A stretch of 33,488 bases of DNA from Choristocarpus tenellus KU-1152 (GCA_964200185.2 CAXNAD020000062.1:1-33488); one strand, 5' to 3'. Shown: positions 1 through 33,488, counted from the stretch's first letter. The notes: a model not told the origin generated them from the sequence alone. Numbers and translations are program-made.

Positions 1-41
1 GGGTTGTCTTCTTGTGTATCAACTTTGTCACACACATCCAC
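1..41 (-). CDS. Exon S (partial, runs off window): VDVCDKVDTQEDN...
   Basis: Acceptor ctctcatccctcag|GTG. Phase 0 matches exon R and the frame is open to the window edge. Confidence 0.7.
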   Translation of the reverse strand, partial: MDVCDKVDTQEDN

Positions 42-3000
42 CTGAGGGATGAGAGCTAGATTCTATCAGTAATTAATTGATCCCTGTTACCATACATGGG
101 ATTGTGTCTCACTGGCATCTTCTTGTCAAGTCATTTTGTTGAGCACAACTGATAAAAGAACTATTGAGGAATGCTGAGTACACTCTGCACACAATCACAG
201 TCTCCCAAAAATTCATAAAGTCCACTTTCATTTGATTCTGTCACACCCATTGGATGAGTCTCATCCAGGAGGTCTGTGTGAAACAGTAAACAAAAACACT
301 CTTCTACCTAGGAATTTTTGATAACGAGACCACATTAAAGCAACATATAACAGTACCTTTTATTATAGCTATTTTGAAGAAGGCGTGCAGCGTAAGATTC
401 CCTATGGAGATACAGCGTACATATGGTTTATATTCCAGAGCATGATTACACCATTGTATCTACGGAAGAATCAAGTACTCCAGAAAATGCACTCCAAATT
501 CGGTCTGCCTCTCAAGTTTTTTGTGCTTCATCTGCTGTGACAAGAAGGTGCTTTGAACTATGAAGTATGGTGTTACATTTTACTCCAGAGTACTTGTAAT
601 ACTTGATGTAGTCATCCTTCCCAACCTATGAAAACTAGTTTCTCTCTGATGTAGACATTGTGTCATTGGAAGGTTAGTTATTTGTAGTATATATCTACAC
701 AGGAATACCACACTTCCTCAAATCCTATGCTCCTGCACTGCTCATAAAGTGGAAAAGTTCTACAGCCTACAGCACGTGGTTGAAGAGCTGATTGGTGGGT
801 ACATACCATCAAGGGAGTCTGAAAAAATGTTGTAATTGATTGCATCAACTCTTGTGTGGTGCTTATTGCTTTCCTATGGCATAGAATATCTCACCTCCTC
901 AATCACACATTCCAGCAGCTCAGATGCACCCACCAGGCTGGTCGTTTTCCTTGGGCAATTTACATCAGGTGATGATCCTGTTGTGGTACCATCAGGACAG
1001 TAGTACCCCACTGGGCACTTGTTCTGCAAAAATTGAGGTTGGTAGGCAGCAGATGTATATTTTGTGTTGGCAATTTACATCAGGTGATGATCCTGTTGTG
1101 GTACCATCAGGACAGTAGTACCCCACTGGGCACTTGTTCTGCAAAAATTGAGGTTGGTAGGCAGCAGATGTATATTTTGTGTTCAATAGTAACCTCACGA
1201 AGACCAGGGATCGCCAATGCACTGAATTGATATACTGCAAAATCAAGATAATCTAACATGATTACAGCACCCCATTTTTCACTCTGCATGTAGATTTGCT
1301 GCAGCCCAGCAAACTTACAGTATTCGGATTTTCATGTTTTCAACCCCACTCAGCATGAAAAAAGGACCGCCTCCATAATGGAGATCAGAGCCTGGGGCCT
1401 ATAGAGCATCAGTTGAAGGCACCTATGGCATGGTACACTATGTACAGTAGTTTGAAGACAGTATTGCTTCTAAGGAAATATTTCAAGCACATGCAAAGAA
1501 CAAGATGAAAGTGCCCAAGGTTTTAGAGTGCACCTGTGTTGCCAAGTAGTTGGGTGTTCCACTTGTGCAGTAGTAGCCACTCTCACATACACTCAAATAC
1601 TGATTCTTGGACTCAGTTCCCGCAGAACAAGAGAAACCAGCAGGGCACTTGTGGGAGAACTGATTGGAACGATCTGACCCGCACCCACAATTGTATCCTG
1701 CTGGACACACCTTCAATAGGAATATAGATATTGATTTTATATAAATGCAAGTGTGGTGCAATTTTTTTAATACATATTATATTCAGCACTCCATACTAAC
1801 CAAGGTAAGGTGATGCCATACTCACATTACTCTCTGTAAGGTTCACCATGGCCTGTGTTCCACATATTCGTCCAGGTGGACATGGGAGGCAAAAGGACAT
1901 GTCGGTTACACCCATTGATGAAGAGAATGTTCCTGTTGGGCATGGTCGGCAAGTTACAGAATCCGACAAAGATCGATAGTGCCCAGGCTCACACACAGTA
2001 GGCTCGTATGTTCCATATGATGGGCATGTATAGCCAGCAGGGCACACTCGACACTCATTTGCACCTGTGAGTGGGGCATAAGTGCCTGGAAAGCAAAGCA
2101 TGGGCACTACTGATCCCTCATCTGACGCAAAGTTTCCGATTGGAGTTTCAATCGGATAGCCAACCCCAGGAGGGCAATAGTGCCCTCTATAGCATTGACC
2201 GGAACCTGAGGGTGAAACTGATGCTTGCTCACAGTAAGTGCCTTCTGTGCATATTTGTGGTGCTGAAATACCTTCTGGTATTGAAGAAACCCAGTTTATG
2301 GTCAAGTTGTGTGCCACTCCACCAAGGCAAAATGTCCCTGCTGGGCAAGGGAGTGGTCTCTTGTCAGTAGGGTCAGCTGGGTTGAGAGTGTAGGTTCCTT
2401 CCTGGCAGTAGTATCCAGGTGGGCAAAGCAGAATGGGGGCAGAGAGTCCCTGGGCGACACAAACAAAGCCTGCAGGACACAACTCTGGATAGATCGTTCC
2501 CCATCCAGGGCAAATATGTCCTGTATCACATAGAGTGCAGTTGGATTGTGCCACTTGCATGTTGTAGGAGCCTGGACTGCATTCTCTGGGCTTTGTGTTG
2601 GCCACACCTGGACAGTATTGGCCTTGTGGACATGCCACTGCTGCAAAAGGGGTAGGACAGAAGTATCCTGTAGGGCAAGGCCCTGAACCCTCAGGAGTGG
2701 ATGATCCACGGGGGCAAAAGAATCCATCAAAGCAGCGTTGTGGTGTACTGAAGTTCTTAGGGAGGGGCACACTACTGCTAACGCCTTGTCCACAATAGTA
2801 CCCAAGGGGACAAGTAATTGGTTGCTCTGCTAGTACAAGGGTAGTTGGTGGGTGTTCAAATCTAACAGAACCTGTAGCCGGTCTATCACGGGAATGATAG
2901 ATCCATCTAGAAGTCCATGACGAAGTGTTGGCAAAGGCTGCACCAGTCTCCAGAATCTCTATCCAATGTAAGCTGTCAGAAGAGTTGGATATACCGACAG

Positions 3001-6000
3001 CATGCTGAGTTTTGACACCGTGAGGGCAGAAATGACCCTTGGGACACTGTGATGCAGGTTGTCGTAGCCCAGTCTCATGGCATACAGAGCCAGCAGTGCA
3101 GATAATAGGTGTAGTGAGGCCAAAATCTGTAGTGAAAGATTGGATGGCGAAAAAGATCAAAGAAGAGTATGAATATCTTTGCCAATAAGAGTACAAGTAG
3201 TAATATCAACTTTCAAGGCCCTTTCCCTCAGGGGTTGTGGGTGGTAAGTTTTTGAGAGTTTCCTCCCAATACCATAATCTTGTATCCACACATCACAAGC
3301 AGCAAGTGGAACCTAGGTTCCCTCCTCCTCCTTCTGGTTTGATTTCTTCAAAAGAGTATGACTTGTACGTTTCTCATCAGGCATAAATTAGAGCTGTGGA
3401 TGACCTCAAGAAAAAATAAACAACAAAACCAACAATTTCCTTCTCCAACTTTCCTGTCAAGAGGGAAGCAAAAGATCAACTTAGGTATGTTCAATATTGT
3501 TGGGACCAGTATTGGCTTTGTTGCTACCTATGGTGGAGATCATTTGCTGATGACAATGCCTATTTAGGGTCAAAGGCTAAGATAGATGTAGTAGCTTCAC
3601 GTTGGTGTCTTGGTGTGTGTGCGTGTGTAGAGCTTTCCCGCACCCAACTTGGCAAGGTATTGCATCATAATGCACTGAAGGTGAAATTTTCACATGTTGC
3701 TGCCAAGGCGTTACACCACATAGAATGTGCAATGAGCAAGCAGTATGTAAAGATGTAAGGTTCAAGTTCTTGCCTGGACACATGTACCCGACTGGGCAGG
3801 GCAGGCACTGCACAGCCCCCAATGACGGTTGGAAGCCCCCTGGCTTACACAAAGTGAAGTTTGATGTACCAATTTCAGAACAGAAAGTTCCACTAGGGCA
3901 GGAAATAGGCAAGAGGTGTGGGGAGAATGTTCCTGCCCTGTGTCCCCGGATGTATTTTATTGTCTTTCCATTGTTGGTATGGTCGATACCATTAACTGTC
4001 ACCTCAAGAGAAAAACTTCCAAGGTTAGACCATAGACGGGGCTGTGCTGAGTGGGATGGTGCCATACACAATGCAACCGTTGACATGACAAATACTCCCT
4101 TCACACTAACACCTCCAAAACGGCAAGCAAGGGCTGAGGTATTCACAAAGTTTGACCCAGTCACAAAGACAGGTACTTGTCCTGTCTCCAAAACTTCAGT
4201 GGGTTGCAATCCATCCACTGATGGGTCTTTGATATACAAAAATTGTATACTATTCATTGAGTAGTCAACACCATTATTTGTCACATCCACCGAGACCAGC
4301 CCAGGAGGATGTTTGGGTGTCTTGCACAGGATTGTGCTTGGTGATATCCAGGTGACTGCAGTAGCAGAAACCTCCCCAAATTTGCATGTCAGCTCAGAAG
4401 ATTCATTGAAACCAGTCCCACTGACTGTTACAACAGTCCCCCCCCTTGAAGCTGGCCCCATCAAAGGCCAAACACTGGTAACTGCAACAGGGGGGTGGTA
4501 GGTATATTCCACACCAGAAAGAGTATAGTCAGCCCCATTTGCACTAACCTCAACTGGCACCACACCTGCCTTGCTTGGGGGTGCCACACAGAGCAATTCA
4601 TTGTGGCTGAGATATCTAGCCATGACCACTTCAGTGCCAAATTTGCAAGTTGCTGCAGGTGTGTTCAGGAAATTAATGCCAGTTAGTAGGACCTCACTTC
4701 CACCCCTGGATGGGCCCTGTGTAGGACTTAGCACTAAGATTTCCATTCTGCTGTCATAGGTGAAGGTTGCCAAACTGGTCGAAAAACTGACACCATTGCT
4801 GGTCACCTGTGAGATAGATCGTTCTGTTAGGAGCACTTGGAGACATAGGGATAGTAAATCGCATTTTAAAAAAAAATCCACAGTCAAACAATAATTGCAA
4901 TACTTTGATCATGAGGAAGGAGAGTACATGCCTGCTTCAGGAATTCAAGCAAAAAAACAGTATCAGACTCACTGAACATGATTGTGGGATGGTTAGACTC
5001 ATAACAATTTTAATCAAGGTGTCCACATCCAGTAGCTATTCCTTCAAACATTGTCTCTACCTCCACATACACCACAGTTATAGATCCCTCTTGCTGTGGT
5101 GACCAGCAAACCACTTCTGTTGATGTTTGATACACCCCTGGCACCACAATGTCTCCAAATTGACAGGCAAGGGATGAAGAATTGATAAAGTGGTCACCAT
5201 GAATAGTAACCATGGTTGAACCTTCTGCAGGACCATGAAGAGGCGAAATTTCACGAATAGAAATGTCATGATGAAACGTGAATTCCATACCACCTCTGGA
5301 AAATTCAACTCCATCATTGGAGACCTCAAAAAGAACCGTAGCTGGGACATGGCGAGGGGTCACACACTGCATAGTATTCCTTGTGACCATCAGGGCTTGG
5401 ACCAGCACTCCCCCAAAAGAGCAAGTAGATGCTCTACTGCTAACAAACCTTTCCCCAGTTAATGTGATTGTACTACCTCCTGAACTTGGTGCCCCATTGG
5501 GCTGGAAATGACTAATCACAGGCACCGGGGCAATCTGTTTACTCATGCCATGAAGTCCAAGGTTGAAAGTAGTAGCCTGGGAATTAGCAGTCAATCCACT
5601 GCGACTGAATGTTGCACTGGTTGGATGAGAACACCTGGTCGTACTGTCCATATATGCATCTCCCACAGATGCTGGAAAATCACCTCTGTCAAGGACACAG
5701 TCCAATTCAAGAAATTCACCTGAACTGTAGTTGGCATGAAAGGGTGGAAGTTTCCCAACACTAGTTGAGGTAACACCCCAAGCAGTCACATTACCAGATG
5801 AGGTTGCTGGGTTGTAATAGTTTTGGTATGTGAAGGTGGCATCTGGTCCATCTACAACTTGGTCGTTCAATGTGAGTGAGAGTTTCACTTCTCCTTCCTG
5901 ATGTCTGATTGCTGGTGGACTAACGCAAAAGAGCTGCGTGTGTGACACAGTTCTGGCTGCAACAGATCTAGAGCCAAACAAACAGCGCATATTCTGCTGC

Positions 6001-9000
6001 AGTGAAGATCCGAAAATGGCAACAACTGTACCACCATTTAGTGATCCCTGGGCAGGAGATATAAATGATATGACAGCTAATGGAAGGTAAGAAAATGTAA
6101 GCCCACTTGAGGTGTAGTCTACACCATTGATGGTGATGTCAAGGAGAACTGTCAATTCTTCTAATGATCCACTTATCCACTCTGGAGTGATGCATGTCAG
6201 ACTAGAGCTGGACAGGAACTGTGCGGCTGATATGGCAACAGTACCAGTGAGGGGGTCAGTGAATCTGCAGGTAAGGGCCTCAGATGACATATAGCTTTGA
6301 CCAGACACATAAACTTTTGTGCCACCTGATTGGAATCCCCGTGAAGGAAGGACTGAGACAATTGAAGGGGGGTCGATATACATAAATTCAAAGTCTGTGA
6401 CTGTGCTTGTTGGTGATATGGTATTAATTAATTCAAGGGTCACCTTGCCCGTCCTCAACCCAGGTGAAGTAGGGGTGATGCACTTAAAGGTATCAGATGA
6501 AACCTGGGTGACTTGTGCAGTGACCTCCCCAAACTCCGAAGTGAACACACACTCCAGAGAAAGCCTGTCTGCCAAATCAAGTCCTCGTGCTGTCAAGACT
6601 GTGCCACCATAAACAGTTCCCTCATGCGGGGTTAAACTAACATTCAGTGCCTTTTTTGAATACATGAATGGTACACCTGTGGGTGAAAAGTTTGTTCCAT
6701 CCATTGCAACAGATAGCACCACGACATGATCTTGGCTGGCTGGGGGAGGGCACTGAATTGCAGTTTCATTGATGAATGTGCCAATTACATTGTATTCTCC
6801 AAAACGACATATTAGACCAGGTGATGGCCAGAATCCATGTCCATGAACAGTAACAATTTCACCATTTTGATCACCAAGGCCCAGAGATGCTGAGTTCACA
6901 TGAACTGAAGCACTAAATGTGAAATTGGCTGAGGTGTGAAATGCATGCAATACTCCACCAAATACAATTGTAGCAGAGACCTGGCCTGGCATGCGCATTG
7001 GTGTAGAGCATGTAACTGCTTGGGAGGAGATGTATTTGGCAGGGACAATGAAGGCGCCAAACTGGCACTCTAAGCCAACGATGTTGCTGAAATTTTCTCC
7101 AGATATCAGCACAGAGGTTCCACCCCGTTCACTACCGTATGATGGTTCCACTGAGATCACAGTTGAAGGAACCAGGTACAAAAACTCGGAGGCTGAAGCA
7201 CCTACATCGATCCCATTTTCCCCAACAAGGGATACAAGTGTGGCAGTCCTTCCAGAGAGAATTGAGACCTTTTCTAACGGAGGAGATGAGCATATTACTA
7301 CCATATTGGGACCATCAACAAGAAGTGGAACTTGCTCATACCCCCCAAACGAGCATAGCAGTTGGTAATGCAATGCATATAATTCGATGTTTTTCACTTT
7401 GAGAGTGATTGCAGCTCCTCCTGTTGTCCATCCCATAATTGGGTCAATATCGGTAACTTGAATACCTGGGAGGTACTCAAATAAAGGACCTGGATCACTG
7501 AATATATTACCATCCATGCGGATACTAACAGGGAGGCTACCTACAGGAGCTGGTGGGGAAGTACACAAAATGGTATGAATGTCCACAAACGCAGCTGGCA
7601 CCTCAGCTGAACCAAATATACAGGAGATTTGTCCAGTAAGGTGGAAGTTGTTTCCTCTTACTCGCACAGGTGTCCCGCCGGATGTACAACCCTTGGGTGG
7701 CAACAACATGGTCACTTGGACTTGTGACTCATATGTGAATTCAACCAGCCCTGGAATACTAGTGCTACCAACTTTCAACCCAACTTGAACAGTTCCTGGA
7801 TGGTGTGGTGGTGTGTCACACACAACCTCCTGCTCAGAAATCCACCTTGCTGATGATGTAGCTACCCTCTTGTTCATGATCTCCTTATGGTCCAAATTGA
7901 GGGCAACAAAAGTGCAAGAAATGTTTCCACTGGGGCGAAATCCAATGCCATGAATGTGCAGTTTGGTTCCTCCAACTTCATTCCCTCGCTCAGGATTCAA
8001 GGTAACAACAGATCCAACTGAGTAATAGGTGAAGCTGAGGCCAGTGGGAATGAAGCTTGTGCCGTTAATGCTGATCTTAACACTCGCCTGAACTTGCTCC
8101 CTGGAAGATTGCCACTCAGGAGATTGACAAATAACACCAATTACCCGTTTGGGATTGACAAGCACTTCTGCAACAACATCAGCATAGATACCACCCTCAG
8201 CAAATCTGCAAATTGCAGAAGAGTGAACTGATTTTGTCCGGGTAACATTCCCCTCACTGATATGCCCAAAGCCCAAGAACACCTTGGTACCTCCAGCAAA
8301 TTCACCAGATGATGGTTTCATTGATATTGGAATATCATTGGAGTATGAATATGTAGCTGACTCGTCCGGAGTGGTTGTCCCATATGCCAAGACACGAACA
8401 TGGACAACATCTGCATCATTCCGAGGTGGTGCAGTACACAAAACTGCATTGCAAAGTTGCATATGGTTTGCTGGATCCAGAAGACATTCCTCTGTCGGTA
8501 GTCTGATAGTGTTGCCAGGCACAGGTACATCCCCAAACATGCACTGTGTGTCTCCACTACTCAAGACTTCTCTGACATCTGGAGCTTGTCCAGATAAGAT
8601 TACTTTGACTGGGGTGCCACCAAAAACATTCCCATGAGGAGGAGTTACTTCAACTATTGATAGTCTTTGCCGAATCTCAATAATAGTTACGGAATCCGAC
8701 AGATCTACACCATTAGTTGTAACAGTCACCAAGACTGGGTTGCTCTTCAGAGTAAGGCCAATAGGGGCTTGGCACTGCAGCATATCCATCGACATCCACC
8801 TTGTGCTCAGCCCATATTCTCCATTGAACAAACATCCTAGATTTGGATCATCATAAAAGTTCTCACCAAAAACTGTAACCCATGCAGGCTCATTGCTAGC
8901 AATTGCTTGAGGTGTTAAGCCAGTCACCTTGGGACTAAGTAAGTACCTGAATGGACTGCCATTAACTGACTCCAGCACGATACCATCAATGCTAACAGTG

Positions 9001-24000: not shown

Positions 24001-27000
24001 CTAAGCCTTGGTTGGACACAGAAGGCTGTCAATTGTCTCCCACAAATCAACAAGAAAAGAAAATCCATTGGCACCAGGAGTGCCTTTTGGGAATCAAATC
24101 ATACTTAGCACCCTCTCCTGATTAATGAGTGCGATGACATTTACCTAATAGTTGATACGACAGACTTTGAGATTAGTGTGCATTGCACCCTATATGTGGT
24201 CAGCTGAAATGTTCACACACACTTCCCCCAAGTCTTAATCTTACCTGTATTGTTTCTGTGCCATCATATCCTGGATTACGGATATATATCAGGTCAGCCA
24301 AGGCAAGGGCTGAAAGCATGTCATCTGCACTTCCAACCAGCTGCAGTTGACTACTAAAACGTGAGCTCCCTCCAGTCTGTGCATAGCAGAGACATTCTCA
24401 TCAGCACCACCACAATGTGCAAGAGGAGTAGTCTGTACTCAGTTGCAAATTGTGCTCTATCAATAGTAGAGCATTGCATCCCTCAAAAACAAAACTAGAC
24501 ATACCGCAAAGTGTGCTGTTAATATCTTACTTTGGATAGTTTTTTCTTTGCTTGACATGATTGTGTGCAACTTGAATAAATTTAGTGCTATAGCTTTACA
24601 AGGTGTGTAAGTGGCTACTGTTCCTGCTTCTTCACCATGACTAATTATAACTTCAATGTACCAGCTCCAATGTACCAGCTTCTAGAAGCAAGAGGTAAAA
24701 AATTAATTTGACCATGTGTTCGTTGTATGCCATTCCATTGTCCATTATTTAAGTTTGTCCACGATTCATGAGGTGGATGTGCCCTTTACATCCTTGTAGT
24801 ATGAACTATTAAATTTCATACCTGTAGGCCAATAGTTCTGTCTTCAACTCCTTGCAGCATGAGAGCACCTGGTGCATTATCAACTGATATTGTCATTGTC
24901 AGATTGTGTGTCAACCATTTTGAGCGCTCCTGAAGTGTGCTGTGCTGGTCTAGCAAATTAAAGGCGGCCATCTTGACAACATGGTGACGAGGTACAATAA
25001 TCTTGGGTTGATCATTCACTGCACCCACAAATACTGGCAGCCCTTTAACGACCTATGACAATATCAGCAAAGAAAGTCATGGATGTAGCAGTGGACAAAG
25101 AAAGTCACACAAATCGCAAAGAGCAAGAGGAGAGGATCAAGTTGTAAGGTACTCAGAACATCAGTCTAAATGTCTACAACCAGGCTAATCAAAACTCACA
25201 GCATAACTGGGCAACTGTTGGCAAGAATACCGCAGCACCTGACATCTACTCAGACTACCCTTTAAACAATGGAATTCACCTCCCAGTTAGTTTCCTTGGT
25301 TTCATCACCTACTGGTCAATACTCAATAAAATAACTAGTACAGTACATAGTATAGCACCGTACAGGTTAGTTGTAACCTTTGTATTGATCAATTTTATCA
25401 GATTAGTAGCAAGGTAATAATGCGCATACAAATACTGTCAGGTATCATGAAATGATATCACAGTGAGCGAAAGTATCTTAGGGTTAGGGTAGAGCCGGGT
25501 CTGTTTGGGGTCCAAAATCCAATTTTTCGATTTTGATGTAATTTCGACCATTGTGTTTGTTACGAAGTGTCAATATCCTTTTTCCGGGCACATCTTTCAA
25601 AAAGTACACATTTTACCTACTCCAAAACAATTCAAAGTAGGAAAAACGGTCATAAAAAACATGTACGAAGCAAAGCCCCAAATGGAAAAAAGGGCAAAAC
25701 TTATACCCTCTAAGATACTTTCAATTAGTCATGTAGGGCTCCGGGCCTACTTGTATATATACAAACTGCTGAAGCCACAATATTGAAGCCTTATGCCTGC
25801 ATCAGCATTTGCAACATAAGCAAGATACAATTTCTTGCAACACACAAATCATACCTTACATCAAACAGTACGTTATTTCTATCTGGTGGAGGACAAGAAA
25901 GTGGCTGGAACTTTCCACCTAAGAATGAATTACCTCTGCCTCCTCAGATGCCACCTGCCATACTGCAGCAGTGAATACCTCAACATGCTGCATGCTGTTG
26001 AAGTCATGGTCTGGTACATACTTAATGTCACCCACAGCAATGTTGATACTGTCAAGAGTTCCAGTGAAAGATAATGAGTGGTCGAGCCATCCCCTTCCAC
26101 GAGTGAAGTTGAGTCCCTGAGTAACAATCAGTAACAATCAGTAACAATCAGTAACAATCAGTAACAATCAGTAACAATCAGTAACAATCAGTAACAATCA
26201 GTATCAATCAACACAGTGGTATGGGAGTATTGACTATTACCAGAACACCTTAACAACAGAGTTACATACACATAAGGGTCCTGCACAATATAGTTCAAAA
26301 ACATTCTTACAATATAGCCATCTTCTAATCCAGTCCTGTGGTATGATTCTAGGTGATGTAGTGAAAATAATGGCTGTACAACTTGACCTTCGTAAGATCA
26401 CTGTACGACAAATAACAGTACTTAAATATCAATATATATGTAAACCAGAGGTCTACAATAGGTGCAAGTAATATCTGCATTTTCTTTCTTTTTCCCTACA
26501 AACCTACATACAACATACAACAAGCAACAGGGGTTAACAACAGAACTCCTCACTATCAATGCACCAATGTGAACATGGCAGTATTTACACACCAGCACTT
26601 AATGATCCATATCCGACAATATGTCAGTGAGACCCTTCTACTTACGAAGTTACCCCCAACTTCACAGCAAATTTGCAAGGTAGCTCCAGCATATGTTAAC
26701 ACAGCACATAGCTCCCCGTATGATTTAGTGGACTTCAAATCTAATTTCAATGAGAAATTGATGTAATCCCCTACACATTTGAGAAAGTAATGTAAAGTAT
26801 GGCTGAGGAAAGATTTTATTCAGTACCAAGAGCTGGAGTACACCTTCTATGAAGAACGCGCATTGCCTTGGCTTCCATAATCAAATCAAATTGTATCTAG
26901 TATAGCGAAAGTAGGAGTGTGAGAACTAAGATATCCAACACAAGTTGTCTTACCAGTGTATTGTTGAGGGACAGTCGTCCAGCAGTGACATGAAGCCTGG

Positions 27001-27210
27001 TGGTAAATAGAAGGTCCTCATCACCCTCCATGGTAGCGTCTGCATCATAGATGCTCATGCCTTGAATGGATAAAACACCATCTTCCTTCACAGAGGGACC
27101 AGCTGGAAGAACAAGTTCTGGACTGTCAGGAACACTGATGACAGAAAGATTCACCTTAAGACAGAGATATTGGAGCATCGGAGGGAAAGGATTGTCACCG
27201 TCTAAAACAA

Positions 27211-27268
<58 letters not shown>

Positions 27269-30200
27269 AATTTCAGGTGAAAGGGACAAGAAAGGAGTGA
27301 GGGGAAGGAACATTGGCAAGCCTCAACGCTGCAATCCACTGAGGAGACACTATTGAGCATATCATCCATAGTGAAACCCATTTCACAACAGCATCCTCAC
27401 TACTGAACAGTCACAAAAGGTTCCTTAGCAGCTATCCAAAACTACCCTTCCCAGTGTTCTCGCTTGTCAACGAAGGAACAATCTGTCCTTGACACTGGCT
27501 ATATAACAATTAGAGCACCTGATACATCAAGTCCACAAAGAAAGTCTTACAATGCAAGTCATTATTATCTCCTCTTTATTGCAGATATTGCCCTGTGAAC
27601 CCACAGCTGCTATGTCCCTCTAGCTGTATGCCCAAGCATGATCACTCTAATAAAATGTCACCATCCTGTCTTGTTTCTTATCAGTACTACTGGGAGTAGT
27701 ACTTTCAATGTGCAATGTTATGAAAATTAGTTGAGAATCTAATGTCCTACAATCACAAACACACCTTCTTGGTATCTGACTTGGCCTCTCCTGCCCCTAT
27801 ATACATTTGGTCATTGACAGTGATTGTCAAGGTATCATTCCCATACCTGAACACCAGTAGGATGGAGGTTACATTGTTCCAATGGTACGAGTTGAGATAA
27901 AGAGCCACCAGAGTAACAGTGATTGAGAGTGAAAAATAATCAATTTGTACATCATTGCATTTGGAATAGAACATTTTAATGCCAAAAAAGACTCAACTGA
28001 ATATACATCTATGTTTTACGTACCAGTTGAGATGCCCCCTGTATGTGATCCTTCCGAGTGCATACATAATACTTGCGACTGAACCATGGAATTGCACAAG
28101 TTCATCCTCAGTCCCATCACCAGTGCCGAAGCTGAGACCATCACTGCCTTGCAGAGACACCACGCCATGCTCAACAAAAAGCCTTACAGCAAGCTCATAG
28201 TCAGAAGCCACGGCCATGTCTATGTCCATAATTTGCACACCACTAATGTGTAGCTCATTATCCTCGTCCAGAACAAAGGGGCCTTGAGGGAGAATTATGT
28301 GGGGCTGGTTGTTTTGTGCATTAACCAGTACCAAGAGCTCCTCTCCACCCTGCTCTTGTTTTTTTTGTAATGGAAAAATACAATAAAAATACAATACCAA
28401 TCCAAGATTGTTGAGAAGGAATTAATGTGCAATGGATAATAGAAATGATAAAATGCTATCTTGCAAGCAACGAAAGGAGTTTTGTTTATTGGTTGTCTAT
28501 TACTTTCAAGTGCAAAGATATCAACAAAGACTGAGAAGGACTGTGCCTATATGATTGTGCCAAAGTGCAGAGGAGCCAATTGCCTTTTCCCAAGCAATTT
28601 GTTTGCAATATAATATGTGACTCCCATGAAACTCATAATTGTGCTGTCACTAATGATTGAAAGTACTCTAAAGTTTGATCCAAATGGTGATAATCAAAAA
28701 CATCTTTTCCGTTGAGCTCTATATTTGCTCAGGCAAAGGTAAGTCACACAACTGGGGTATAGCAGTGAGTCAAACATCAGGGGGTATTTACATGCAATTA
28801 ATGGAAAATCCCAACACAGAATTCAGGTGCATTGTAGAGTAGTATGGATCGATGCTCCTCTCCCAATCCCACCACTTGCCTGGAATGACTCCCCTATGCC
28901 ATTGAGCATATACCACGGCACAGCTGTATCAGTGTGATCTGATTTCCACTGCAATGCGGCTGTGTGACTCCCTGCAGCCAGGGTCAACACCACATGTCCT
29001 CGCAGCTCAACCACGGTACGTTCAGAGCCATCTTTTTTAGTCCCAGAGTCTCTGTCCAGGTGTGGTGCCAGATGAGATGTAATATGGTGTGCTATGAGCA
29101 AGTTCAAGAAAAAATATATATATTGCACAGTCCTTTGGTGAAACAATGTCTGCGATGACTCTAGGCAAGCCAACCTTATCTGTGAATTCAGGTAAAACCA
29201 GCACATGGCTAATAATGATGGAAAGGGCCCCAATGTCCTTCCTCTCAACAAGATAAGATAATGGTGCTAGTGGAAATAATGGTAACAAAAATAGTAATAA
29301 TAATAATAATAGTAGTAGTAAGAAAAATGCTCAAGAAGCATTCCTTGGAATGCATTTGTGTATCATAGTTGATTACTCTTTCAGTGTAGCTAAGTTTGGG
29401 GAACATGAGTGCTTCTCTTCTCAAGTGTCAAGGGTCCAAACCTTGGTCGATGAGATATTTCTTACAACAAAAAAAGTGTTTTAACCATACCCCATGAGAC
29501 AAGTGAGTAGAGCTGTGTGTATGTGGGTACAGATTTATCTAGCAGGACATGATGGAGGGAAATATAACGGTTGCTACTTGATTTGTGAAATAGCACCATC
29601 AGGGGCGTATGCACCATATTTCATGTGAGGGAGAGTTGACAAGTGGTAAGATAGGTTAACTCAATGAACGAGAAGCAAGGCAGTTGATTACCCATGGACA
29701 TACTAGTACTAGTAAAGCTGAATTGCAGAGCACTTTTTGTGAGAGTTGAGACCAAAATTCACGTGACAAGTATTAGTAAGTAGTCCTCACAAACAAGTGT
29801 GATAGAAATATAAGCAACAACCTATTTGTTGGGGTGGAGCGATTCCAACTTGACACCTGGAAATATGCACTGGAATACCTGCAAGTGGTCTATATATCAA
29901 GCATAGATTGCATTTTGCTTGAATTGGGCTATACAGGTGGCTCTCACTGGAATGTACTTTTCTGTACATCCAATCCTAATGAAAATCTCAGCTTCACACA
30001 TTATTATACCGTATATCCCTAAAGGGACTTGTTTAACAGCAAGAGTACCTCATCCTTATCCATACCAAAAGGTCGAGGAATTTGACTACGGGAACAATCC
30101 TGAAGTGCTGTGAAATGTGCAGACTAACACCTTGCAAGAAGAAACGAAACACCAAGAAGATCACTCCATGATACATAGTTGGAAGTATATCTCAATACCT

Positions 30201-32875
30201 GTATGGTACTCCATCAACAAGTAAACGTGCTGCCACTGAGCTCCAGCGTTCCCATGACCATGAGTCCAATGAGGGGTGTCCATACTGAGAGAGTGCAAGG
30301 GTAGAGAGAGAGGAGTAGCCTAAGAACAATACTATAGTTGGTATAATGGTAACAGTACTTTGATGTAGTGGATAAAATTAAAAAGAACTATGATTTAGTG
30401 GAAGAATATCACAAATGAACCATTCATGCTCACCTGAGTCACTGGCAGTCCATATGTGATTAGGACTGTTGATTGTGAGCTCAGTGTAAATTGAAGTATC
30501 TTTCCACCAACGGTCTGCCATTCTTCACGGTTGTCCATTAGAACCACCGGAGTAAGGATGTGCTGTGATACAATGCCAAGGCGCTCTCCCATGACAGACA
30601 GAAAGCGTGACATAGCAAAGCCATCCAAGAATGATGGAGAGGATCGCCAAACTCCAACAAAAGTTCCCCATTTTCGCCACTGAACAATAACTTCATGTTG
30701 TCCAGCCTGCACAGGACGCCACATACACAGACGTGTATACACACATGCATATACCATTTACATATTATTACATCACATGCCTTTGAAATGATGGGAGAAG
30801 CAGTAAAGTAGAATCATCCCAATATGGATTTAACTACCTCTTCTGCATTGAGATAATGGTTTTATAAATAATCCTTCCAACCATTCCACACCCCAACAAT
30901 GATTCCAGCATAATCTGCCCTCTACCCAAAGTTGTTACCTATTCCATCCTTTTCATAGTGTGTAGTACCCTGGCAATCACCTGCAGTGTGAGGACCAAGT
31001 CCCTCTCTAGGATACCAGTGGTCATGCGTCGAGTCAGAAGAGCAAACGACGCAAAAGACTCACGGTAGGGTATTCCATCCACCACCACACGCGCTACAAC
31101 ATCATCTGATGGTTGTACAACTGACCCGAAGTGGAGTGAGAATTTGGAGGGGAAGGCAGGCACTGAACCTCAGTTCAAAGGATTAGTATGGGATATATGC
31201 ACAGCCTTAGGTAGTAAATGGATGTTGACAAATCAAATAACTGGAAAAGTCTATTCTTTTCCCAAAGCAAGCACACCAAGGAAATAAATTATACAGTAAC
31301 ACCACAACAGAATACTGAAACAACAAAGTGAAAAGTACTATGTACACAGCAGATATGCAATTGCGACTTAGGTCCAGGTCATTGTGAGATAAATTTTGTT
31401 AGCAAGAGGTCCATTGTGTTGAATGCTCCCTAGTAGTCCTCACCGTCTGAAGCAAAATTGTAATCTGGCTTGACAGACATGGAGTACAGAATTCTGAGTG
31501 TAGCTGTCTCAGGAAGAGTGAAGACCATTGTCATTTCTGGTACGTCTTCCCATAGTCCTGTTTGGCTTATTCGCGCATCTGTTTTTGCCGCCTTGTGCCA
31601 CATATAACGATGCTGTTGGGAAAAAAAATAAAATACGTAAGCTGGGAAATGGCATTGTGTCTCTCATGCATGGGCACATGAGCGAAGACTTGTAACAGAC
31701 CTGCAGTTTGAGGAAGCTGTTAGATTCATCATGGTCAAATCATTGTCTTAGCATAAGACAAGTCACAAGGATGATGCCATGTGCTGAGAAATTGCACATA
31801 TGATTATGCGGTCACTCAGAAATAGTAGAGCAGCCCCTTGGAAATTCTTGTTGAACTAATGAATGAGCACAATGTAAACGGATCCAATTGGGGTACGGGA
31901 ACGCACTAGGGTGTTTAGGCCTGAGGGAAGATACTTTGTATGGTATTGAATTTCTGTTTGTTCCATGGCAGGCATGTTGTAGGTCATTTTTTTCGCCCTA
32001 ACTAGTACAAGTAACACACCCACACCAAAAGACACAAGTCTTCACCAACCTATGAGGGCTATTGGTACATACCCAAGATATCTGTGTTCAGAAACTCCTT
32101 AGTTTAGCGCTTAGCTTAAGTGCCACTGATCTTTGATGTCTTGTCCACTTTTGTCAATTTAGTATTATAGTTAAAGAGATATCTCCCTTGTAACAGCTTT
32201 AGTAAAGCTACATAATCTTCTTGCACAGAACGCCTTTGTCTTCCTTGTGAATGTGTTGGACATAATGTGCAAGTAGATCATCCACACCTGTTCCATGTAA
32301 TCTGAAGACTAATATTAATAATAAGTTGTGTCTGTCATCAACAGTGTCATATCAAAGTGTGACATAGGCTAGAATATTGCCTGCAGCAGAGAGAGAGTGT
32401 GTGTGTGTGTGCGTTTTCTCAAATAAACAATTTCAAACATGACTAGGAACCAAACAAACATCACTTTATCCAACTGAAAGTGACACCATCATCCAGCAAG
32501 AATATGCCCCCCAACTTTGGTCAGAGGCAAGGAGACCGTGAGTATTCACTGGAGAGCAGTCGACTGTAGCACTTGGTCCACACTGTCAAACTTGATTTGG
32601 TGATGAAGAGAGGATCTATTCTAGGGTCTCACCTGAGCAGTAACCACAATAGATCTTCCACTTGCATGCCCATCTGACTCACTTGGACGGTTACTCCAGC
32701 TTCTTACAACCCCCCCAACACTCTTTTTCCACTCAAGCCCAATTGTGTGGTTTCCTGGGCCTAGGTCTGTCACCAGATGGCCCCCAACAGTACTCACAAA
32801 AGCTTCATATGGTCCAGCAGTTGATGCATGGGAAGCTGATTGCCGAAAAGGTATGCTATTCACCACAAGGCGAAC
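1..32875 (-). CDS. Giant multi-exon gene, partial at both ends. Predicted extracellular/cell-surface protein of >7,300 aa: beta-sandwich modules + cadherin-like repeats + ~60 IPT/TIG repeats + Cys-rich GCC2/GCC3-like repeats. Exons: join(complement 32633-32875, 31444-31612, 30981-31162, 30434-30706, 30199-30284, 28880-29051, 28024-28349, 27765-27846, 26954-27154, 25934-26116, 24822-25052, 24245-24376, 21326-22914, 5061-20604, 3774-4806, 1826-3126, 1534-1710, 895-1023, <1-41)
   Basis: All long minus-strand ORFs join through GT/GC-AG boundaries with matching phases. Protein repeat motifs continue across junctions: VYVE|VTSNGVSF, GHLNW|YGNDTL, YMCP|DFGLTTP, ECVIEE|VDVCDK. No start codon/signal peptide or stop/TM segment is identifiable inside the window. 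Confidence 0.9.
895..1023 (-). CDS. Exon R: NKCPVGYYCPDGTTTGSSPDVNCPRKTTSLVGASELLECVIEE
   Basis: Acceptor caatttttgcag|AAC, donor GAG|GTGAGA. 129 nt, phase 0. The acceptor is duplicated 115 bp upstream. Confidence 0.85.
954..1183. repeat. Perfect 2 x 115-bp tandem duplication (954-1068, 1069-1183) spanning an intron 3' end and the first 70 nt of exon R
   Basis: Direct comparison: ggcaatttacatcagg...gtatattttgtgtt occurs twice, head to tail. Confidence 0.95.
1534..1710 (-). CDS. Exon Q: VCPAGYNCGCGSDRSNQFSHKCPAGFSC...NYLATQ
   Basis: Acceptor cctattgaag|GTG, donor CAG|GTGCAC. 177 nt, phase 0. Confidence 0.85.
1826..3126 (-). CDS. Exon P: Cys-rich CPxGxYCPxG repeats (GCC2/GCC3, ephrin-receptor-like)
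   Basis: Acceptor ttcactacag|AT, donor AAT|GTGAGT. 1,301 nt, phase 1 to 0. Many CPxG(Y/F/H)(Y/F)C units. Confidence 0.9.
3774..4806 (-). CDS. Exon O: completes IPT 54, adds three more IPT repeats and the start of the Cys-rich repeats (GC donor)
   Basis: Acceptor atctcacag|GTG restores VEVTSNG. Donor CCAG|GCAAGA. 1,033 nt, phase 0 to 1. Confidence 0.85.
5061..20604 (-). CDS. Exon N: giant 15,544-nt exon encoding ~54 tandem IPT/TIG repeats
   Basis: Lies within the stop-free 5,201-codon ORF. Acceptor ttttgaacatcag|G, donor GAG|GTAGAG. Hand count of 54 'P-x-x-G-x-x-x-GGT-x-V-x-I-x-G-x-x-F...C-x-FG...C-x-x-P...V-x-x-NG-x-D/F...F-x-Y' units, some degenerate. Confidence 0.93.
21326..22914 (-). CDS. 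Exon M: end of cadherin-like repeat 3, then three IPT/TIG repeats, the third carrying an inserted cupredoxin-like module
   Basis: Acceptor ttttttgtgttccag|GTT, donor AG|GTATAT. 1,589 nt, phase 0 to 2. PxxGPxxGGT...CxFG...C motifs. Confidence 0.9.
22929..23191. repeat. Intronic minisatellite, ~13 units of 20-21 bp (consensus ATGTATGATAACAATGATAAG / ATGTATGATAACAAGATAAA)
   Basis: Units delimited by eye. The array ends about 14 nt from the exon M acceptor. Confidence 0.95.
24245..24376 (-). CDS. Exon L: TGGSSRFSSQLQLVGSADDMLSALALADLIYIRNPGYDGTETIQ (absent from the ORF track)
   Basis: Acceptor atgcacag|ACT, donor CAG|GTAAGA. 132 nt, phase 0. Aligns by eye to FHGSVASIMYALGRITY...YGNDTL of repeat 1. 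Confidence 0.85.
24822..25052 (-). CDS. Exon K: VVKGLPVFVGAVNDQPKI...RTIGLQ, cadherin-like repeat 3 (N-part)
   Basis: Acceptor ttgtcatag|GTC, donor CAG|GTATGA. 231 nt, phase 0. Confidence 0.85.
25934..26116 (-). CDS. Exon J: GLNFTRGRGWLDHSLSFTGTLDSINIAVGDIKYVPDHDFNS...EEAE
   Basis: Acceptor gttactcag|GGA, donor GAG|GTAATT. 183 nt, phase 0. Confidence 0.85.
26121..26210. repeat. Intronic 10-bp tandem repeat (GTAACAATCA)x8 + 1 variant copy
   Basis: Directly visible. It starts 4 nt from the exon J boundary, immediately upstream of the acceptor. Confidence 0.97.
26954..27154 (-). CDS. Exon I: VNLSVISVPDSPEL...KEDGVLSIQGMSIYDAD...GRLSLNNTL, cadherin-like repeat 2
   Basis: Acceptor ctgtcttaag|GTG, donor CTG|GTAAGA. 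201 nt, phase 0. Confidence 0.85.
27213..27266. repeat. (TG)27 microsatellite, intronic
   Basis: Directly visible. Confidence 0.97.
27765..27846 (-). CDS. Exon H: YGNDTLTITVNDQMYIGAGEAKSDTKK
   Basis: Acceptor gtgttcag|G, donor AAG|GTGTGT. 82 nt, phase 2 to 0. Confidence 0.85.
28024..28349 (-). CDS. Exon G: GGEELLVLVNAQNNQP...DEDNELHISGVQIMDID...ITYRGHLN(W), cadherin-like repeat 1
   Basis: Acceptor gagcag|GGT has a weak pyrimidine tract and could shift by 3 nt. Donor TG|GTACGT. 326 nt, phase 0 to 2. Confidence 0.8.
28880..29051 (-). CDS. Exon F: DSGTKKDGSERTVVELRGHVVLTLAAGSHTAALQWK...GESFQ (GC donor)
   Basis: Acceptor ggacag|A completes Arg. Donor CAG|GCAAGT matches the GC-AG consensus. 172 nt, phase 2 to 0. 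Confidence 0.75.
29295..29320. repeat. Short compound (TAA)n(TAG)n microsatellite, intronic
   Basis: taataataataataatagtagtagta. Confidence 0.7.
30199..30284 (-). CDS. Exon E: YGHPSLDSWSWERWSSVAARLLVDGVPY(R)
   Basis: Acceptor ctctctcag|TAT, donor AG|GTATTG. 86 nt, phase 0 to 2. Repeats the RxxVDGxPYR motif. Confidence 0.85.
30434..30706 (-). CDS. Exon D: AGQHEVIVQWRKWG...LITYGLPVTQ
   Basis: Acceptor cctgtgcag|GCT, donor CAG|GTGAGC. 273 nt, phase 0 to 0. Confidence 0.85.
30981..31162 (-). CDS. Exon C: (V)PAFPSKF...VARVVVDGIPYRES...LVLTLQ
   Basis: Acceptor gttcag|TG, donor CAG|GTGATT. 182 nt, phase 1 to 0. Confidence 0.8.
31444..31612 (-). CDS. Exon B: HRYMWHKAAKTDARISQTGLWEDVPEMTMVFTLPETATLRILYSMSVKPDYNFASD (absent from the ORF track)
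   Basis: Acceptor ttttttttcccaacag|CAT, donor GACG|GTGAGG. 169 nt, phase 0 to 1, open frame. Confidence 0.85.
32388..32411. repeat. Compound (AG)n(TG)n microsatellite, intronic
   Basis: agagagagagtgtgtgtgtgtgtg. Confidence 0.8.
32633..32875 (-). CDS. Exon A (first supportable): VRLVVNSIPFRQSAS...LGPGNHTIGLEWKK...SIVVTAQ, C-terminal part of beta-module 1
   Basis: Donor CAG|GTGAGA at 32633/32632. The acceptor is uncertain (gtgaag|GTT assumed). The translation resembles modules 2 and 3. Confidence 0.75.
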
Positions 32876-32898: not shown

Positions 32899-32982
32899 TG
32901 ACACAGTAAACAATACAATGAGTGATACAATAAACAATATTGTGAGTGATACAGTAAACACTACAGTAAGTGAGTGATACAG
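32899..32982. repeat. Degenerate ~24-28-bp tandem repeat, ~3.3 copies (TGATACAGTAAACAATAC..TGAG)
   Basis: tgacacagtaaacaatacaatgag / tgatacaataaacaatattgtgag / tgatacagtaaacactacagtaagtgag / tgatacag. Confidence 0.75.
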
Positions 32983-33451
32983 AATGCATTATAGCAGAAG
33001 TGGTGGAGCAAAAACAACAATTGATGTTACTGGCTGGGCGGAGGTATTCACCCATTTTGACAACAAATGAGAACTACTTGCTAGTCTCATGCCCCTGGAA
33101 ATAGCGTATTATTACCTAGCTCTTCCACCTGTGAGAGACCCTCTGTACTAAAAATGTGGGGAAGTGCTTCAGAGGAAATGACAAAGGAGATGAAATCACA
33201 ACGGAACAAATCCAATAACAACGAAAGAGCAACTGCCTGCTTAGATGAGGTGACCCTTATTAGACACCATAGTCCTGTCAGTCAAGATGCACAGAGGCTC
33301 AAAGTATCTGGGGGGGTGGCGGCTGTCCATTTGGGGTCATTTTTTTCATGTTGATATTTTTGTGTGATTTGGTTGCATACGTCAGATGGATAATGTAAGT
33401 GCACTTTTCCTGGTCATGCCCCAAATGGACACCCCTGGTGTAGACCCACCG

Positions 33452-33488
33452 CCCCACCCCCCCCCCCCCCCCCCCCCCCCCACCCCCC
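33452..33488. repeat. Poly-C (poly-G on the gene sense strand) tract at the window end
   Basis: Directly visible. It may mark a contig break. Confidence 0.9.

What the first reader, a model, noticed from the sequence alone, without database searches (positions are those of the whole stretch)
1..32875. Giant (>7,300 aa, both ends missing) mosaic surface protein combining four or five unrelated extracellular repeat types
Seen: one continuous spliced frame with three beta-rich modules, three cadherin-like repeats, ~60 IPT/TIG repeats, an inserted cupredoxin-like module and Cys-rich CPxGxYC repeats. Established: IPT arrays form extended stalks (plexins, fibrocystin/PKHD1, Dictyostelium Tgr allorecognition proteins), and GCC2/GCC3-like Cys repeats occur in large protist surface and wall proteins. 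Inference: 60 Ig-like domains at ~4 nm each could give a rod of order 0.2 micron. That would be long enough to project N-terminal binding domains through or beyond a cell wall, as a eukaryotic analogue of a bacterial giant adhesin or a wall-spanning receptor/sensor. I do not recognise this as a named, characterised gene.
Basis: partly seen in the sequence, partly recalled or inferred. Interest (0 to 1): 0.8.

Follow-up and report, generated by a model that had tools for sequence, protein, structure and literature searches.

The report
Giant surface stalk joined to membrane module
This brown seaweed gene encodes a roughly 9,000-residue cell-surface protein: a stalk of over 60 bead-like domains, possible binding parts at the tip, and an undescribed 11-helix membrane part that weakly resembles force-sensing channels.

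Summary
The window is a whole contig (C62) of Choristocarpus tenellus. Its minus strand carries one multi-exon gene.

- **Domains found:** three copies of an unnamed beta module (the first cut by the contig end), three cadherin-like repeats, 60 HMM-detected IPT/TIG domains (54 in one 15.6-kb exon), a ~180-aa insert inside TIG 3, and about 19 CPxGxYC units (Pfam Ephrin_rec_like).
- **Missing C-terminus found:** window bases 1-56 overlap contig C957 exactly. An exon reads across the joint. C957 continues colinearly with full-length homologues: one more TIG, a juxtamembrane domain, 11 transmembrane helices and a tail. The whole protein is about 9,000 aa.
- **Stalk length is conserved:** 18 homologous ORFs of 5,146-5,273 aa align end to end at ~31% identity.
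- **Reading:** a tethered membrane sensor fits better than a shed adhesin; the function is inferred.
- **Prior record:** a partial, unnamed public model exists. The scan had already noted a look-alike giant IPT protein on other DNA of this genome.
- **Not tested:** the cupredoxin fold and transcript continuity.

The parts
33294..33488 (.). Dispersed repeat at the contig end; the reason the 5' end of the gene is missing
   Evidence: 86-93% identical copies on dozens of listed contigs, with 3,738 first-look candidates. No convincing coding sequence or signal peptide lies upstream of 32881.
28880..32875 (-). Exons for three copies of an unnamed ~160-aa beta module; copy 1 lacks its N-terminal half. 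Supported exon pieces: 32875-32636, 31615-31469, 31106-31041, 30715-30428, 30302-30198, 29002-28880
   Evidence: Module HMM from P0044/P0028, E from 1e-21 to 0.014. tblastn to P0044 residues 99-492 and P0028 residues 4-150. No Pfam family. Weak Atlas lead to the Bc2l-C_N lectin domain, score 0.91.
24245..28349 (-). Exons for three cadherin-like repeats. Approximate pieces: 28349-28066, 27846-27765, 27134-26954, 26116-25934, 25033-24822, 24376-24245
   Evidence: Mutual similarity at E 2.4e-6 and 6.8e-4. Linker motifs of the xVNDxPxI type. Exon 28349-28020 aligns to P0044 residues 500-612 at E 2.4e-8, a region Pfam calls Cadherin_4/Big_9/Cadherin_5 and which finds bacterial cadherin-like giants. 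Exon borders are approximate.
21326..22914 (-). Exon with TIG 1-3. TIG 3 is interrupted by a ~180-aa insert (about 21891-21352) before its last strand
   Evidence: Own TIG HMM hits at residues 54-151, 157-247 and 277-360 of frame 22971-21286, the last stopping at HMM position 68. Closing strand 'VKFRY' at 21336-21322, just before the splice donor at about 21326. Pfam TIG E 4.6e-26. The insert has no Pfam or PDB sequence match.
5027..20604 (-). Giant exon (open frame 20642-5013): 54 detected TIG domains plus five non-TIG linkers of 37-103 aa
   Evidence: It is colinear end to end with 18 ORFs of 5,146-5,273 aa at about 31% identity. Units are 27.7% identical on average, 49% at most. Splice acceptor at 20604 and donor at about 5027 come from my own splice search.
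3644..4835 (-). Exon with three TIG domains and the first two CPxGxYC units (the public model uses 4803-3781)
   Evidence: Pfam TIG E 2.4e-42 and Ephrin_rec_like. Own HMM. Motifs. Public-model blocks.
1801..3126 (-). Cys-rich exon with 12 CPxGxYC units (Ephrin_rec_like / GCC2_GCC3-type)
   Evidence: Pfam PF07699, 24.6 bits against a 23.1 cut-off. 45-55% identical to P0021 5722-6164, P0023 5238-5736 and P0028 6462-6941. Motif count.
892..1707 (-). Further Cys-rich exons (1707-1534, 1138-1070, 1026-892). They include an exact 115-bp x2 tandem duplication at 954-1183
   Evidence: tblastn to P0021 6156-6267 and P0023 5739-5841. TRF finds the duplication at 100% identity. Public-model blocks.
1..56 (-). 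Exact overlap with the start of contig C957. An exon crosses the joint, from about window 50 to C957:171
   Evidence: window 1-56 is the reverse complement of C957:1-56 at 100% identity, and these bases occur on no other contig. P0021 6264-6307 and P0030 4345-4390 align across the joint, in register between P0021 6223-6267 (window 1026-892) and 6305-6429 (C957 518-931).

Best explanation
The gene encodes one very large cell-surface membrane protein of about 9,000 aa, with its N-terminus outside the cell.

Order of parts from the far tip to the membrane:
- three unnamed beta modules and three cadherin-like repeats, the likely binding end;
- a stalk of fixed length made of about 61-65 IPT/TIG domains, one of them carrying an inserted module;
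- a rod of about 19 Cys-rich units;
- on the next contig (C957), one more TIG, a ~480-aa Cys-containing juxtamembrane domain, an 11-helix membrane module with near-invariant acidic residues inside the helices, and a cytoplasmic tail.

Shown: the architecture, the contig join, the conservation of stalk length, the confident fold of the membrane module, and the absence of any Pfam family or Foldseek PDB match for it.

Inferred: fully extended, the stalk would reach about 0.25-0.3 micron, far enough to place the tip in or beyond the wall or matrix. Pull or binding at the tip would be passed through the juxtamembrane domain to the membrane module, which would act as a gated ion or lipid pathway. 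That makes it a tethered sensor, possibly of the TMEM16/OSCA/TMEM63 fold class.
For: Architecture.

Contig join:
- 56-bp exact overlap found on no other contig;
- an exon reads across it;
- about 22 colinear HSPs on C957 match P0021 6305-7779 of 7809 and P0023 5875-7374 of 7414;
- C957 carries the family hallmarks GANDFVDF, ELFHGWK and MCFSSQ.

Full-length homologues show the same order in single ORFs, including Achlya, Aphanomyces and Albugo.

The membrane module is the best conserved part:
- 1,036 clusters at E<=1e-3 and 300 at E<=1e-30;
- invariant Y409, R420, W424, F447, S448, Q450 and D482;
- E195, E327, D391 and E399 are kept in 96-99% of members.

Fold: AF2 model with pLDDT 90.5 and pTM 0.90. 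It has eleven helices, N-terminus outside and C-terminus inside, with K/R-rich cytoplasmic loops.

Structural similarity:
- In VIA-align's wide search, 7 of the top 28 rows are TMEM16F, OSCA1.2, OSCA2.3, OSCA3.1, TMEM63A, Ist2 and TMEM16A. These are mostly the longest alignments (183-290 residues) and span the whole domain.
- Alignments to the 10-helix TMEM16 proteins start after our first helix (residue 46-53). Alignments to the 11-helix OSCA/TMEM63 proteins start at residue 4-27.

Stalk length is conserved across 18 ORFs, and the units are old.
Against: - No experiment or expression data bears on function.
- Foldseek finds no PDB match (best E 0.33, TM about 0.1).
- No Pfam match to Anoctamin, RSN1_7TM or TMC in 53 family members, and no PDB sequence or profile match.
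- OSCA's cytosolic domain between TM2 and TM3 is absent here.
- The N-terminus, including any signal peptide, was not found.
- Transcript continuity across the upstream exons and across the contig joint is untested, and the public model omits the upstream exons.
- The stalk length in nm is an estimate from domain counts.
Confidence: 0.5

Rival explanations
1. Passive structural adhesin or matrix fibril. The stalk and tip bind wall or substratum polymers, and the 11-helix module only anchors the filament firmly, or serves its trafficking, with no gating or signalling role.
For:
- The tip modules resemble bacterial cadherin-like/Big_9 adhesin repeats.
- TIG-domain proteins are enriched in Phytophthora cinnamomi zoospores, a stage that attaches (PMC8360494).
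- The similarity to channel folds is weak.
Against: - A single helix would be enough for an anchor. Here the membrane module and its charged intramembrane residues are the most conserved part of the family.
- The number of units is fixed and the units are old, unlike adhesin arrays that expand quickly.
Confidence: 0.28
2. The membrane module is a transporter or membrane enzyme, for example one that handles wall or matrix precursors or lipids. The stalk would position or regulate it, rather than the module acting as a force- or ligand-gated channel.
For: - Eleven helices with conserved acidic residues also fit secondary transporters.
- The best Atlas shape match is TM9SF, TM 0.34.
- TMEM16 proteins themselves include lipid scramblases.
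Against: - No match to any transporter or enzyme family in Pfam or the PDB.
- Transporter folds align over fewer residues than TMEM16/OSCA.
Confidence: 0.14
3. There is more than one gene. The upstream exons (33-23 kb) or the C957 part would belong to separate transcripts, and the single giant protein would be an artefact of reading across neighbours or of assembly.
For: - The public model starts at 21621 and ignores everything upstream.
- The contig breaks next to an exact 115-bp duplication.
- There is no RNA evidence.
Against: - Same strand and same order as in uninterrupted ORFs of homologues: N modules, then cadherin-like repeats, then TIG in P0044 and P0028; TIG, then Cys-rich units, then the membrane module in P0021, P0023, P0030 and P0050.
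- An exon with the expected homology crosses the joint.
- No competing long ORFs lie on the other strand.
Confidence: 0.08

Closest known systems
Fibrocystin / PKHD1 and PKHD1L1 (animal ciliary and stereocilia-coat proteins)
   Same: Very large membrane proteins, mostly extracellular, built largely of IPT/TIG domains. They are the only named animal proteins recovered by the TIG-array search (P0072-P0081).
   Different: Those proteins carry G8 and parallel beta-helix (PbH1) domains and a single TM helix (Pfam lists). This one has none of these. It has about five times more TIG units, a Cys-rich rod and an 11-helix module. Similarity covers only 6-20% of the query.
Polycystin-1 (PKD1)
   Same: By design: a long array of Ig-like repeats outside the cell, a large juxtamembrane domain, 11 TM helices, N-terminus out and C-terminus in; thought to be a sensor coupled to a channel.
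   Different: No PKD, REJ, GPS/GAIN, PLAT or PKD_channel match in the module or its relatives. No polycystin appears among the fold matches. This is a resemblance in logic, recalled from knowledge, not homology.
OSCA/TMEM63, TMEM16 and TMC membrane proteins (with the cadherin-23/protocadherin-15 tip link for TMC)
   Different: No sequence or profile match and no Foldseek match. The OSCA cytosolic domain is absent. Here tether and membrane module would be one polypeptide. Fold membership is not established.
Bacterial giant repeat adhesins (SiiE, ice-binding adhesin MpIBP, LapA-type RTX adhesins)
   Same: Rods of tens of Ig-like domains with ligand-binding modules at the far end. The homologue's cadherin-like part finds such bacterial proteins.
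   Different: This is a eukaryotic gene with introns and a polytopic membrane end. Its units are old and dissimilar (28% identity) and their number is fixed. There is no type I secretion signal architecture.
Plexins, MET and Dictyostelium TgrB1/TgrC1
   Same: IPT/TIG domains form the stalk of a surface receptor. The best PDB sequence matches of single units are plexin-A1 and MET.
   Different: No Sema or PSI domain, no kinase or GAP domain, and far more units. These proteins have a single-pass anchor, against 11 helices here.

Membership tests
IPT/TIG domain proteins (Pfam PF01833) | Domains scoring above the Pfam gathering cut-off | tested here: met
   943.5 and 706 bits against a 20.9 cut-off, with 26+21+3+3 stretches. 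60 units found with an HMM built from the window's own repeats.
Ephrin_rec_like / GCC2_GCC3-type Cys-rich repeats (PF07699) | Pfam match above the cut-off and a repeated CPxGxYC spacing | tested here: met
   24.6 bits against 23.1 for frame 3196-1799. About 19 motif units.
Fibrocystin / PKHD1L1 | G8 and PbH1/beta-helix domains between the IPT arrays, and a single TM helix | tested here: not met
   The fibrocystin-L hits carry PF10162, PF13229 and PF24606. The window frames and full-length homologues show only TIG-type families and PF07699. The C-terminus has 11 helices.
Classical cadherins (PF00028) | Cadherin domain match with Ca-binding linker motifs | tested here: not met
   No Pfam hit on any upstream exon at E<=1. 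Only xVNDxPxI-like linkers are seen by eye.
Bacterial-type cadherin-like / Big_9 domains (PF17803, PF17963, PF17892) | Pfam match | tested here: inconclusive
   Met in homologue P0044 residues 501-968: Cadherin_4 at 30.8 bits against 25.1, Big_9 at 26.7 against 23.6. The window exon 28349-28020 aligns to that region at E 2.4e-8 but does not reach Pfam thresholds itself.
TMEM16 / OSCA-TMEM63 / TMC superfamily | Sequence family match (PF04547, PF02714, PF07810) | tested here: not met
   No such hit in the module or in 53 family members at E<=10. No PDB sequence or profile hit.
TMEM16 / OSCA-TMEM63 / TMC superfamily | Shared 10-helix core fold, plus a TM0 helix in OSCA/TMEM63 | tested here: inconclusive
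TMEM16 / OSCA-TMEM63 / TMC superfamily | Dimeric assembly and a conduction groove or pore lined by the TM3-TM7 equivalents | not testable with these tools
Near-invariant acidic residues in helices 4, 8 and 9 are only a lead.
Polycystin-1 | PKD repeats, REJ, GAIN/GPS, PLAT, and a TRP-like last six helices | tested here: not met
   None of these families is hit. No polycystin appears among the structural matches.
Cupredoxin fold (the insert in TIG 3) | Greek-key beta sandwich of cupredoxin type; copper ligands | not tested
Pfam at E<=10 and a PDB sequence search find nothing for 21286-21960. Only the insertion itself is confirmed.

The most novel reading that the evidence does not exclude
The protein would be a tether-gated channel (or scramblase) made as one chain. 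A chain of cadherin-like and Ig-like beads about 0.3 micron long would be covalently joined to a very divergent member of the TMEM16/OSCA/TMEM63/TMC superfamily. A single polypeptide would then do what the hair-cell tip link and TMC do with separate proteins. The design would be ancient and widespread in stramenopiles and at least one green alga, and could explain how walled or naked algal and oomycete cells feel wall strain, contact or flow.
Probability: 0.25. Interest if true: 0.9.

Novelty: new variant of a known kind. Interest (0 to 1): 0.68.

Why it matters
Giant Ig-repeat surface proteins are known, and so are TMEM16/OSCA-type membrane proteins. A conserved fusion of a stalk of fixed length, over 60 domains, to an unannotated 11-helix module is not described in anything I could search.

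The module defines a large family of at least 1,036 sequence clusters. It has a confident predicted fold, no Pfam entry and no clear solved relative. That alone makes it a target for annotation and structure work.

If the weak link to mechanosensitive or scramblase folds holds, this family offers a directly testable candidate for contact, wall-integrity or flow sensing in brown algae and in oomycete pathogens, where such sensors are largely unknown.

The conserved number of stalk units also raises a simple, testable question: does stalk length act as a ruler matched to the thickness of the wall or surface coat?

Tried and rejected
- **My own splice-site and hexamer exon finder**. It gave sensible borders only around the TIG exons (22914-21326, 20604, 5027, 4835-3644, 3126-1801). 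Elsewhere it produced many tiny exons. I dropped it for the N-terminal region and for C957, and used homology and module HMMs instead.
- **Pfam on 20 upstream open segments**: nothing.
- **Membrane module against existing resources**: nothing from Pfam, PDB by sequence or profile, the ESM Atlas by features, the Atlas by shape (best TM 0.34, TM9SF) or Foldseek PDB on either model.
- **First model of the whole 1,136-aa C-terminal region.** It was only moderate (pLDDT 61.5) and its VIA list was swamped by three-helix bundles. It was replaced by a TM-only model built from 67 sequences.
- **Word search with the C-terminal module**: only 7 fragments.
- **Literature.** Searches for TIG domains with oomycetes, algae, Ectocarpus, Phytophthora, diatoms or stramenopiles found no characterised relative. 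The phrase form of 'IPT/TIG' cannot be searched, so searches are weak negatives.
- **Readings rejected.** Bacterial contamination, because the gene has introns and brown-algal homologues. Pseudogene, because of the 5,210-codon open frame.
- **Not done.**
The only DNA joined was the two contigs at their exact overlap, inside a script.
  - The cupredoxin-like insert and the N-terminal module were not folded.

Full report
**What the window is.** The 33,488-base window is the whole of contig C62 of a 164-Mb draft assembly in 27,310 contigs. The best protein match is a 6,015-aa 'unnamed protein product' of the brown alga Choristocarpus tenellus, recorded on a contig of exactly 33,488 bp (P0001). 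So the organism is that alga. Rfam finds nothing in the window. All long open frames lie on the minus strand. The largest runs from 20642 to 5013, 5,210 codons without a stop. That cannot be chance and rules out a dead gene.

**Check of the domain census.**
- *TIG domains.* Pfam TIG matches the big frame at E 4.7e-292 and 6e-218. An HMM built from the window's own units finds 54 TIG domains there, three in exon 22914-21326 and three in exon 4835-3644. Five stretches of 37-103 aa in the big exon do not match.
- *Cys-rich part.* It reaches the Pfam cut-off for Ephrin_rec_like and holds about 19 CPxGxYC units.
- *Upstream exons.* None hits Pfam, but two intron-free homologues clarify them. P0044, a 4,379-aa TARA ORF, is followed 150 bp later by a 4,500-aa ORF with TIG and Ephrin_rec_like. 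P0028 is 7,990 aa. Both begin with the same modules, in the same order as the window.
- *Beta modules.* A module HMM from those homologues hits six window exons between 32881 and 28880. This gives three copies of a ~160-aa module, the first lacking its N-terminal half. By analogy with P0044, only about 100 aa, including a signal peptide, would be missing at the N-terminus.
- *Cadherin-like repeats.* The next exons form three repeats with xVNDxPxI-type linkers. One aligns at E 2.4e-8 to the part of P0044 that Pfam calls Cadherin_4/Big_9/Cadherin_5 and that finds bacterial cadherin-like giants.
- *Insert.* TIG 3 is interrupted after HMM position 68 by about 180 aa and closed by a last strand at the end of the exon. 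Whether the insert is cupredoxin-like was not tested; sequence searches are blank.
- *What was not joined.* I built and searched no joined spliced protein. Every search was exon by exon, by reference.

**The public model.** P0001 starts at an internal Met (21621) and skips everything upstream. It also removes two in-frame 225-nt pieces inside the open frame, both in non-TIG linkers, and ends in intron-like sequence near 877. It is therefore a partial model. I cannot tell whether the two 225-nt introns are real.

**The two ends.**
- *The 5' end.* It breaks in a dispersed repeat with thousands of copies. No credible first exon lies between it and 32881.
- *The 3' end.* This one can be recovered.
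  - Window bases 1-56 are the exact reverse complement of C957:1-56, and these bases occur nowhere else in the assembly.
  - C957 (15.6 kb) carries about 22 colinear matches on the matching strand to the last 1,500 residues of full-length homologues: P0021 6305-7779 of 7809 and P0023 5875-7374 of 7414.
  - The window's last matches stop just before that point, at P0021 6223-6267 (window 1026-892).
  - With the two contigs joined at the overlap, an open frame crossing the joint aligns to P0021 6264-6307 and P0030 4345-4390, exactly the missing piece.
  - So the gene continues on C957. In total it encodes roughly 9,000 aa, of which about 7,400 lie in the window.

**What the C-terminus is.** In every homologue with a complete end, the order is the same: TIG array, Cys-rich rod, one or two TIG domains, then a conserved region of about 1,390 aa. 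These include proteins of the oomycetes Achlya hypogyna, Aphanomyces stellatus and Albugo laibachii. Averaged hydropathy shows 11 hydrophobic helices.
- *No known family.* The region has no Pfam family, no PDB relative by sequence or profile and no Atlas look-alike.
- *A large family.* A profile search of 1.84 billion representatives finds 1,036 clusters at E<=1e-3 and 300 at E<=1e-30. One cluster includes a protein of the green alga Prasinoderma coloniale.
- *Fold.* With 67 of these sequences the membrane domain folds with mean pLDDT 90.5 and pTM 0.90. Helix positions and K/R-rich loops fit an N-out, C-in topology.
- *Conserved residues.* Seven residues are invariant. Four acidic residues inside helices 4, 8 and 9 are kept in 96-99% of members.
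- *Present in this alga.* The C957 exons carry the hallmark motifs, so this alga's own copy is intact in these parts.

**Is the membrane module a known fold?** Foldseek says no (best E 0.33). VIA-align gives only modest scores, but they form a pattern.
- In the search of 48,161 representative chains, TMEM16F, OSCA1.2, OSCA2.3, TMEM63A, OSCA3.1, Ist2 and TMEM16A take 7 of the top 28 rows. These are mostly the longest alignments (183-290 residues) and span the whole domain.
- Alignments to the 10-helix TMEM16 proteins begin after our first helix. Alignments to the 11-helix OSCA/TMEM63 proteins include it.
- I therefore hold a very distant TMEM16/OSCA-type fold at roughly even odds and do not file the module in that superfamily.

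**The stalk.** Eighteen ORFs of 5,146-5,273 aa from other assemblies align end to end with the window's 5,210-aa frame at about 31% identity, with offsets under about 65 residues. Partial models from Discosporangium and Ectocarpus indicate a brown-algal origin for this group. Within the protein, the units are on average 27.7% identical and 49% at most. The array is therefore old, each unit has its own counterpart, and the number of units is held constant. This is unlike adhesin arrays that grow and shrink. It fits a spacer whose length matters. At about 4 nm per Ig-like domain (general knowledge, not measured here), 61-65 units plus the cadherin-like and Cys-rich parts would span about 0.25-0.3 micron.

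**Most likely working.** The protein is a polytopic surface protein. Its tip modules (possibly lectin-like; Atlas lead to Bc2l-C_N at 0.91, weak) and its cadherin-like repeats are held far from the membrane on a stalk of fixed length. Its membrane module, the most conserved part, responds to what the tip meets. The most specific version is a tethered, force- or ligand-gated ion or lipid pathway. The architecture and conservation are shown. Coupling and gating are inference. The rivals are a passive anchor for a structural adhesin, a transporter or enzyme module, and separate genes. They are scored in the report sections.

**Comparison with known proteins.** Fibrocystin and PKHD1L1 share only TIG units and lack this membrane end, and their G8 and beta-helix domains are absent here. 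Polycystin-1 shares the design but none of its defining domains. The tip link with TMC, and OSCA/TMEM63, are the nearest functional pictures. No paper in the searchable library describes this family. The brown-algal comparative genomics paper lists IPT only as a domain of FG-GAP proteins. A Phytophthora cinnamomi proteome notes TIG domains as specific to zoospores among its samples.

**Earlier notes of this scan.** Notes on another piece of this genome describe a look-alike giant IPT protein (s1-596038, s1-596027, s1-596023, s1-596059). TIG arrays also lie on C36, C386 and C638, and a second copy of the membrane module lies on C3950. The scan has therefore met this kind of protein before on other DNA. 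The contig join and the membrane module are what this report adds.

**Verdict.** The gene is a real, intact member of a widespread but uncharacterised eukaryotic family. Its new and testable feature is the fusion of a ruler-like stalk to an undescribed 11-helix module.

Noticed in passing
window 954-1183: An exact 115-bp tandem duplication (2.0 copies, 100% identity) repeats a Cys-rich exon ('...NKCPVGYYCPDGTTTGSSPDVNC') together with its upstream intron end. It lies close to the contig break, so it could be a recent duplication or an assembly artefact. The public model uses both copies.
   Followed up: partly
window 19118-18894 and 5759-5535: The public gene model removes two in-frame 225-nt 'introns' from inside the uninterrupted 15.6-kb frame. 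Both overlap stretches that the TIG HMM does not match; the first also removes the end of TIG 6. They could be real or alternative introns, or prediction artefacts.
   Followed up: partly
window 20604-15400 (first ~20 TIG units of the giant exon): There is a three-unit super-repeat. Units a multiple of 3 apart are 35.9% identical, against 29.4% for other spacings, and every third unit has one Cys instead of two. The 67-aa non-TIG linker at residues 539-605 fills exactly one unit slot and keeps the phase, so it is probably a decayed unit.
   Followed up: yes
window 33294-33488: A dispersed repeat of about 190 bp, with 86-93% identical copies on dozens of listed contigs and 3,738 first-look candidates. 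It ends the contig.
   Followed up: partly
window 22926-23191, 26120-26210, 27213-27267, 32899-32973: Intronic simple repeats: a 21/41-bp minisatellite just upstream of exon 22914, a 10-bp unit x9 abutting the acceptor of exon 26116, (TG)27, and a 24-bp unit x3 just upstream of the first recognisable exon.
   Followed up: no
G000 contigs C36, C386, C638 (TIG arrays) and C3950:887-4388 (membrane module): The genome holds at least one more family member. C36 carries tens of TIG units in frames of 321-2,039 aa, and C3950 carries a second copy of the 11-helix module. C36 is probably the 'other piece' of the earlier notes.
   Followed up: partly
cytoplasmic tail of the family (alignments A1, A3, A4; on C957 about 12150-13520): After the last helix, the tail carries Ser/Asp-rich runs, a recurring W-L-x-x-A-R-R motif (three or more times) and, in many members, a CxxC...CxxC pair that looks like a zinc ribbon. 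Their role is unknown.
   Followed up: no
juxtamembrane domain (model md0be4af0c32d residues 30-250; on C957 about 3540-7230): A beta-rich domain of about 220 modelled residues (pLDDT 70-89) within the ~480-aa juxtamembrane region. It has conserved Cys and the motifs 'YLPFFSxCxGxDS' and 'RWxE', and sits directly before helix 1. No fold could be assigned, because the helical part dominated the searches.
   Followed up: partly
L001 (Logan SRR25584953 contig) and L002 (TARA scaffold): L001 is a compact, intron-poor eukaryotic contig. Its family member P0060 (4,435 aa) lies among housekeeping genes, and close relatives of its membrane module cluster with a Prasinoderma coloniale protein, so the family reaches the green lineage. 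On L002, P0044 and the next 4,500-aa ORF are separated by only 150 bp and together reproduce the window's architecture.
   Followed up: partly
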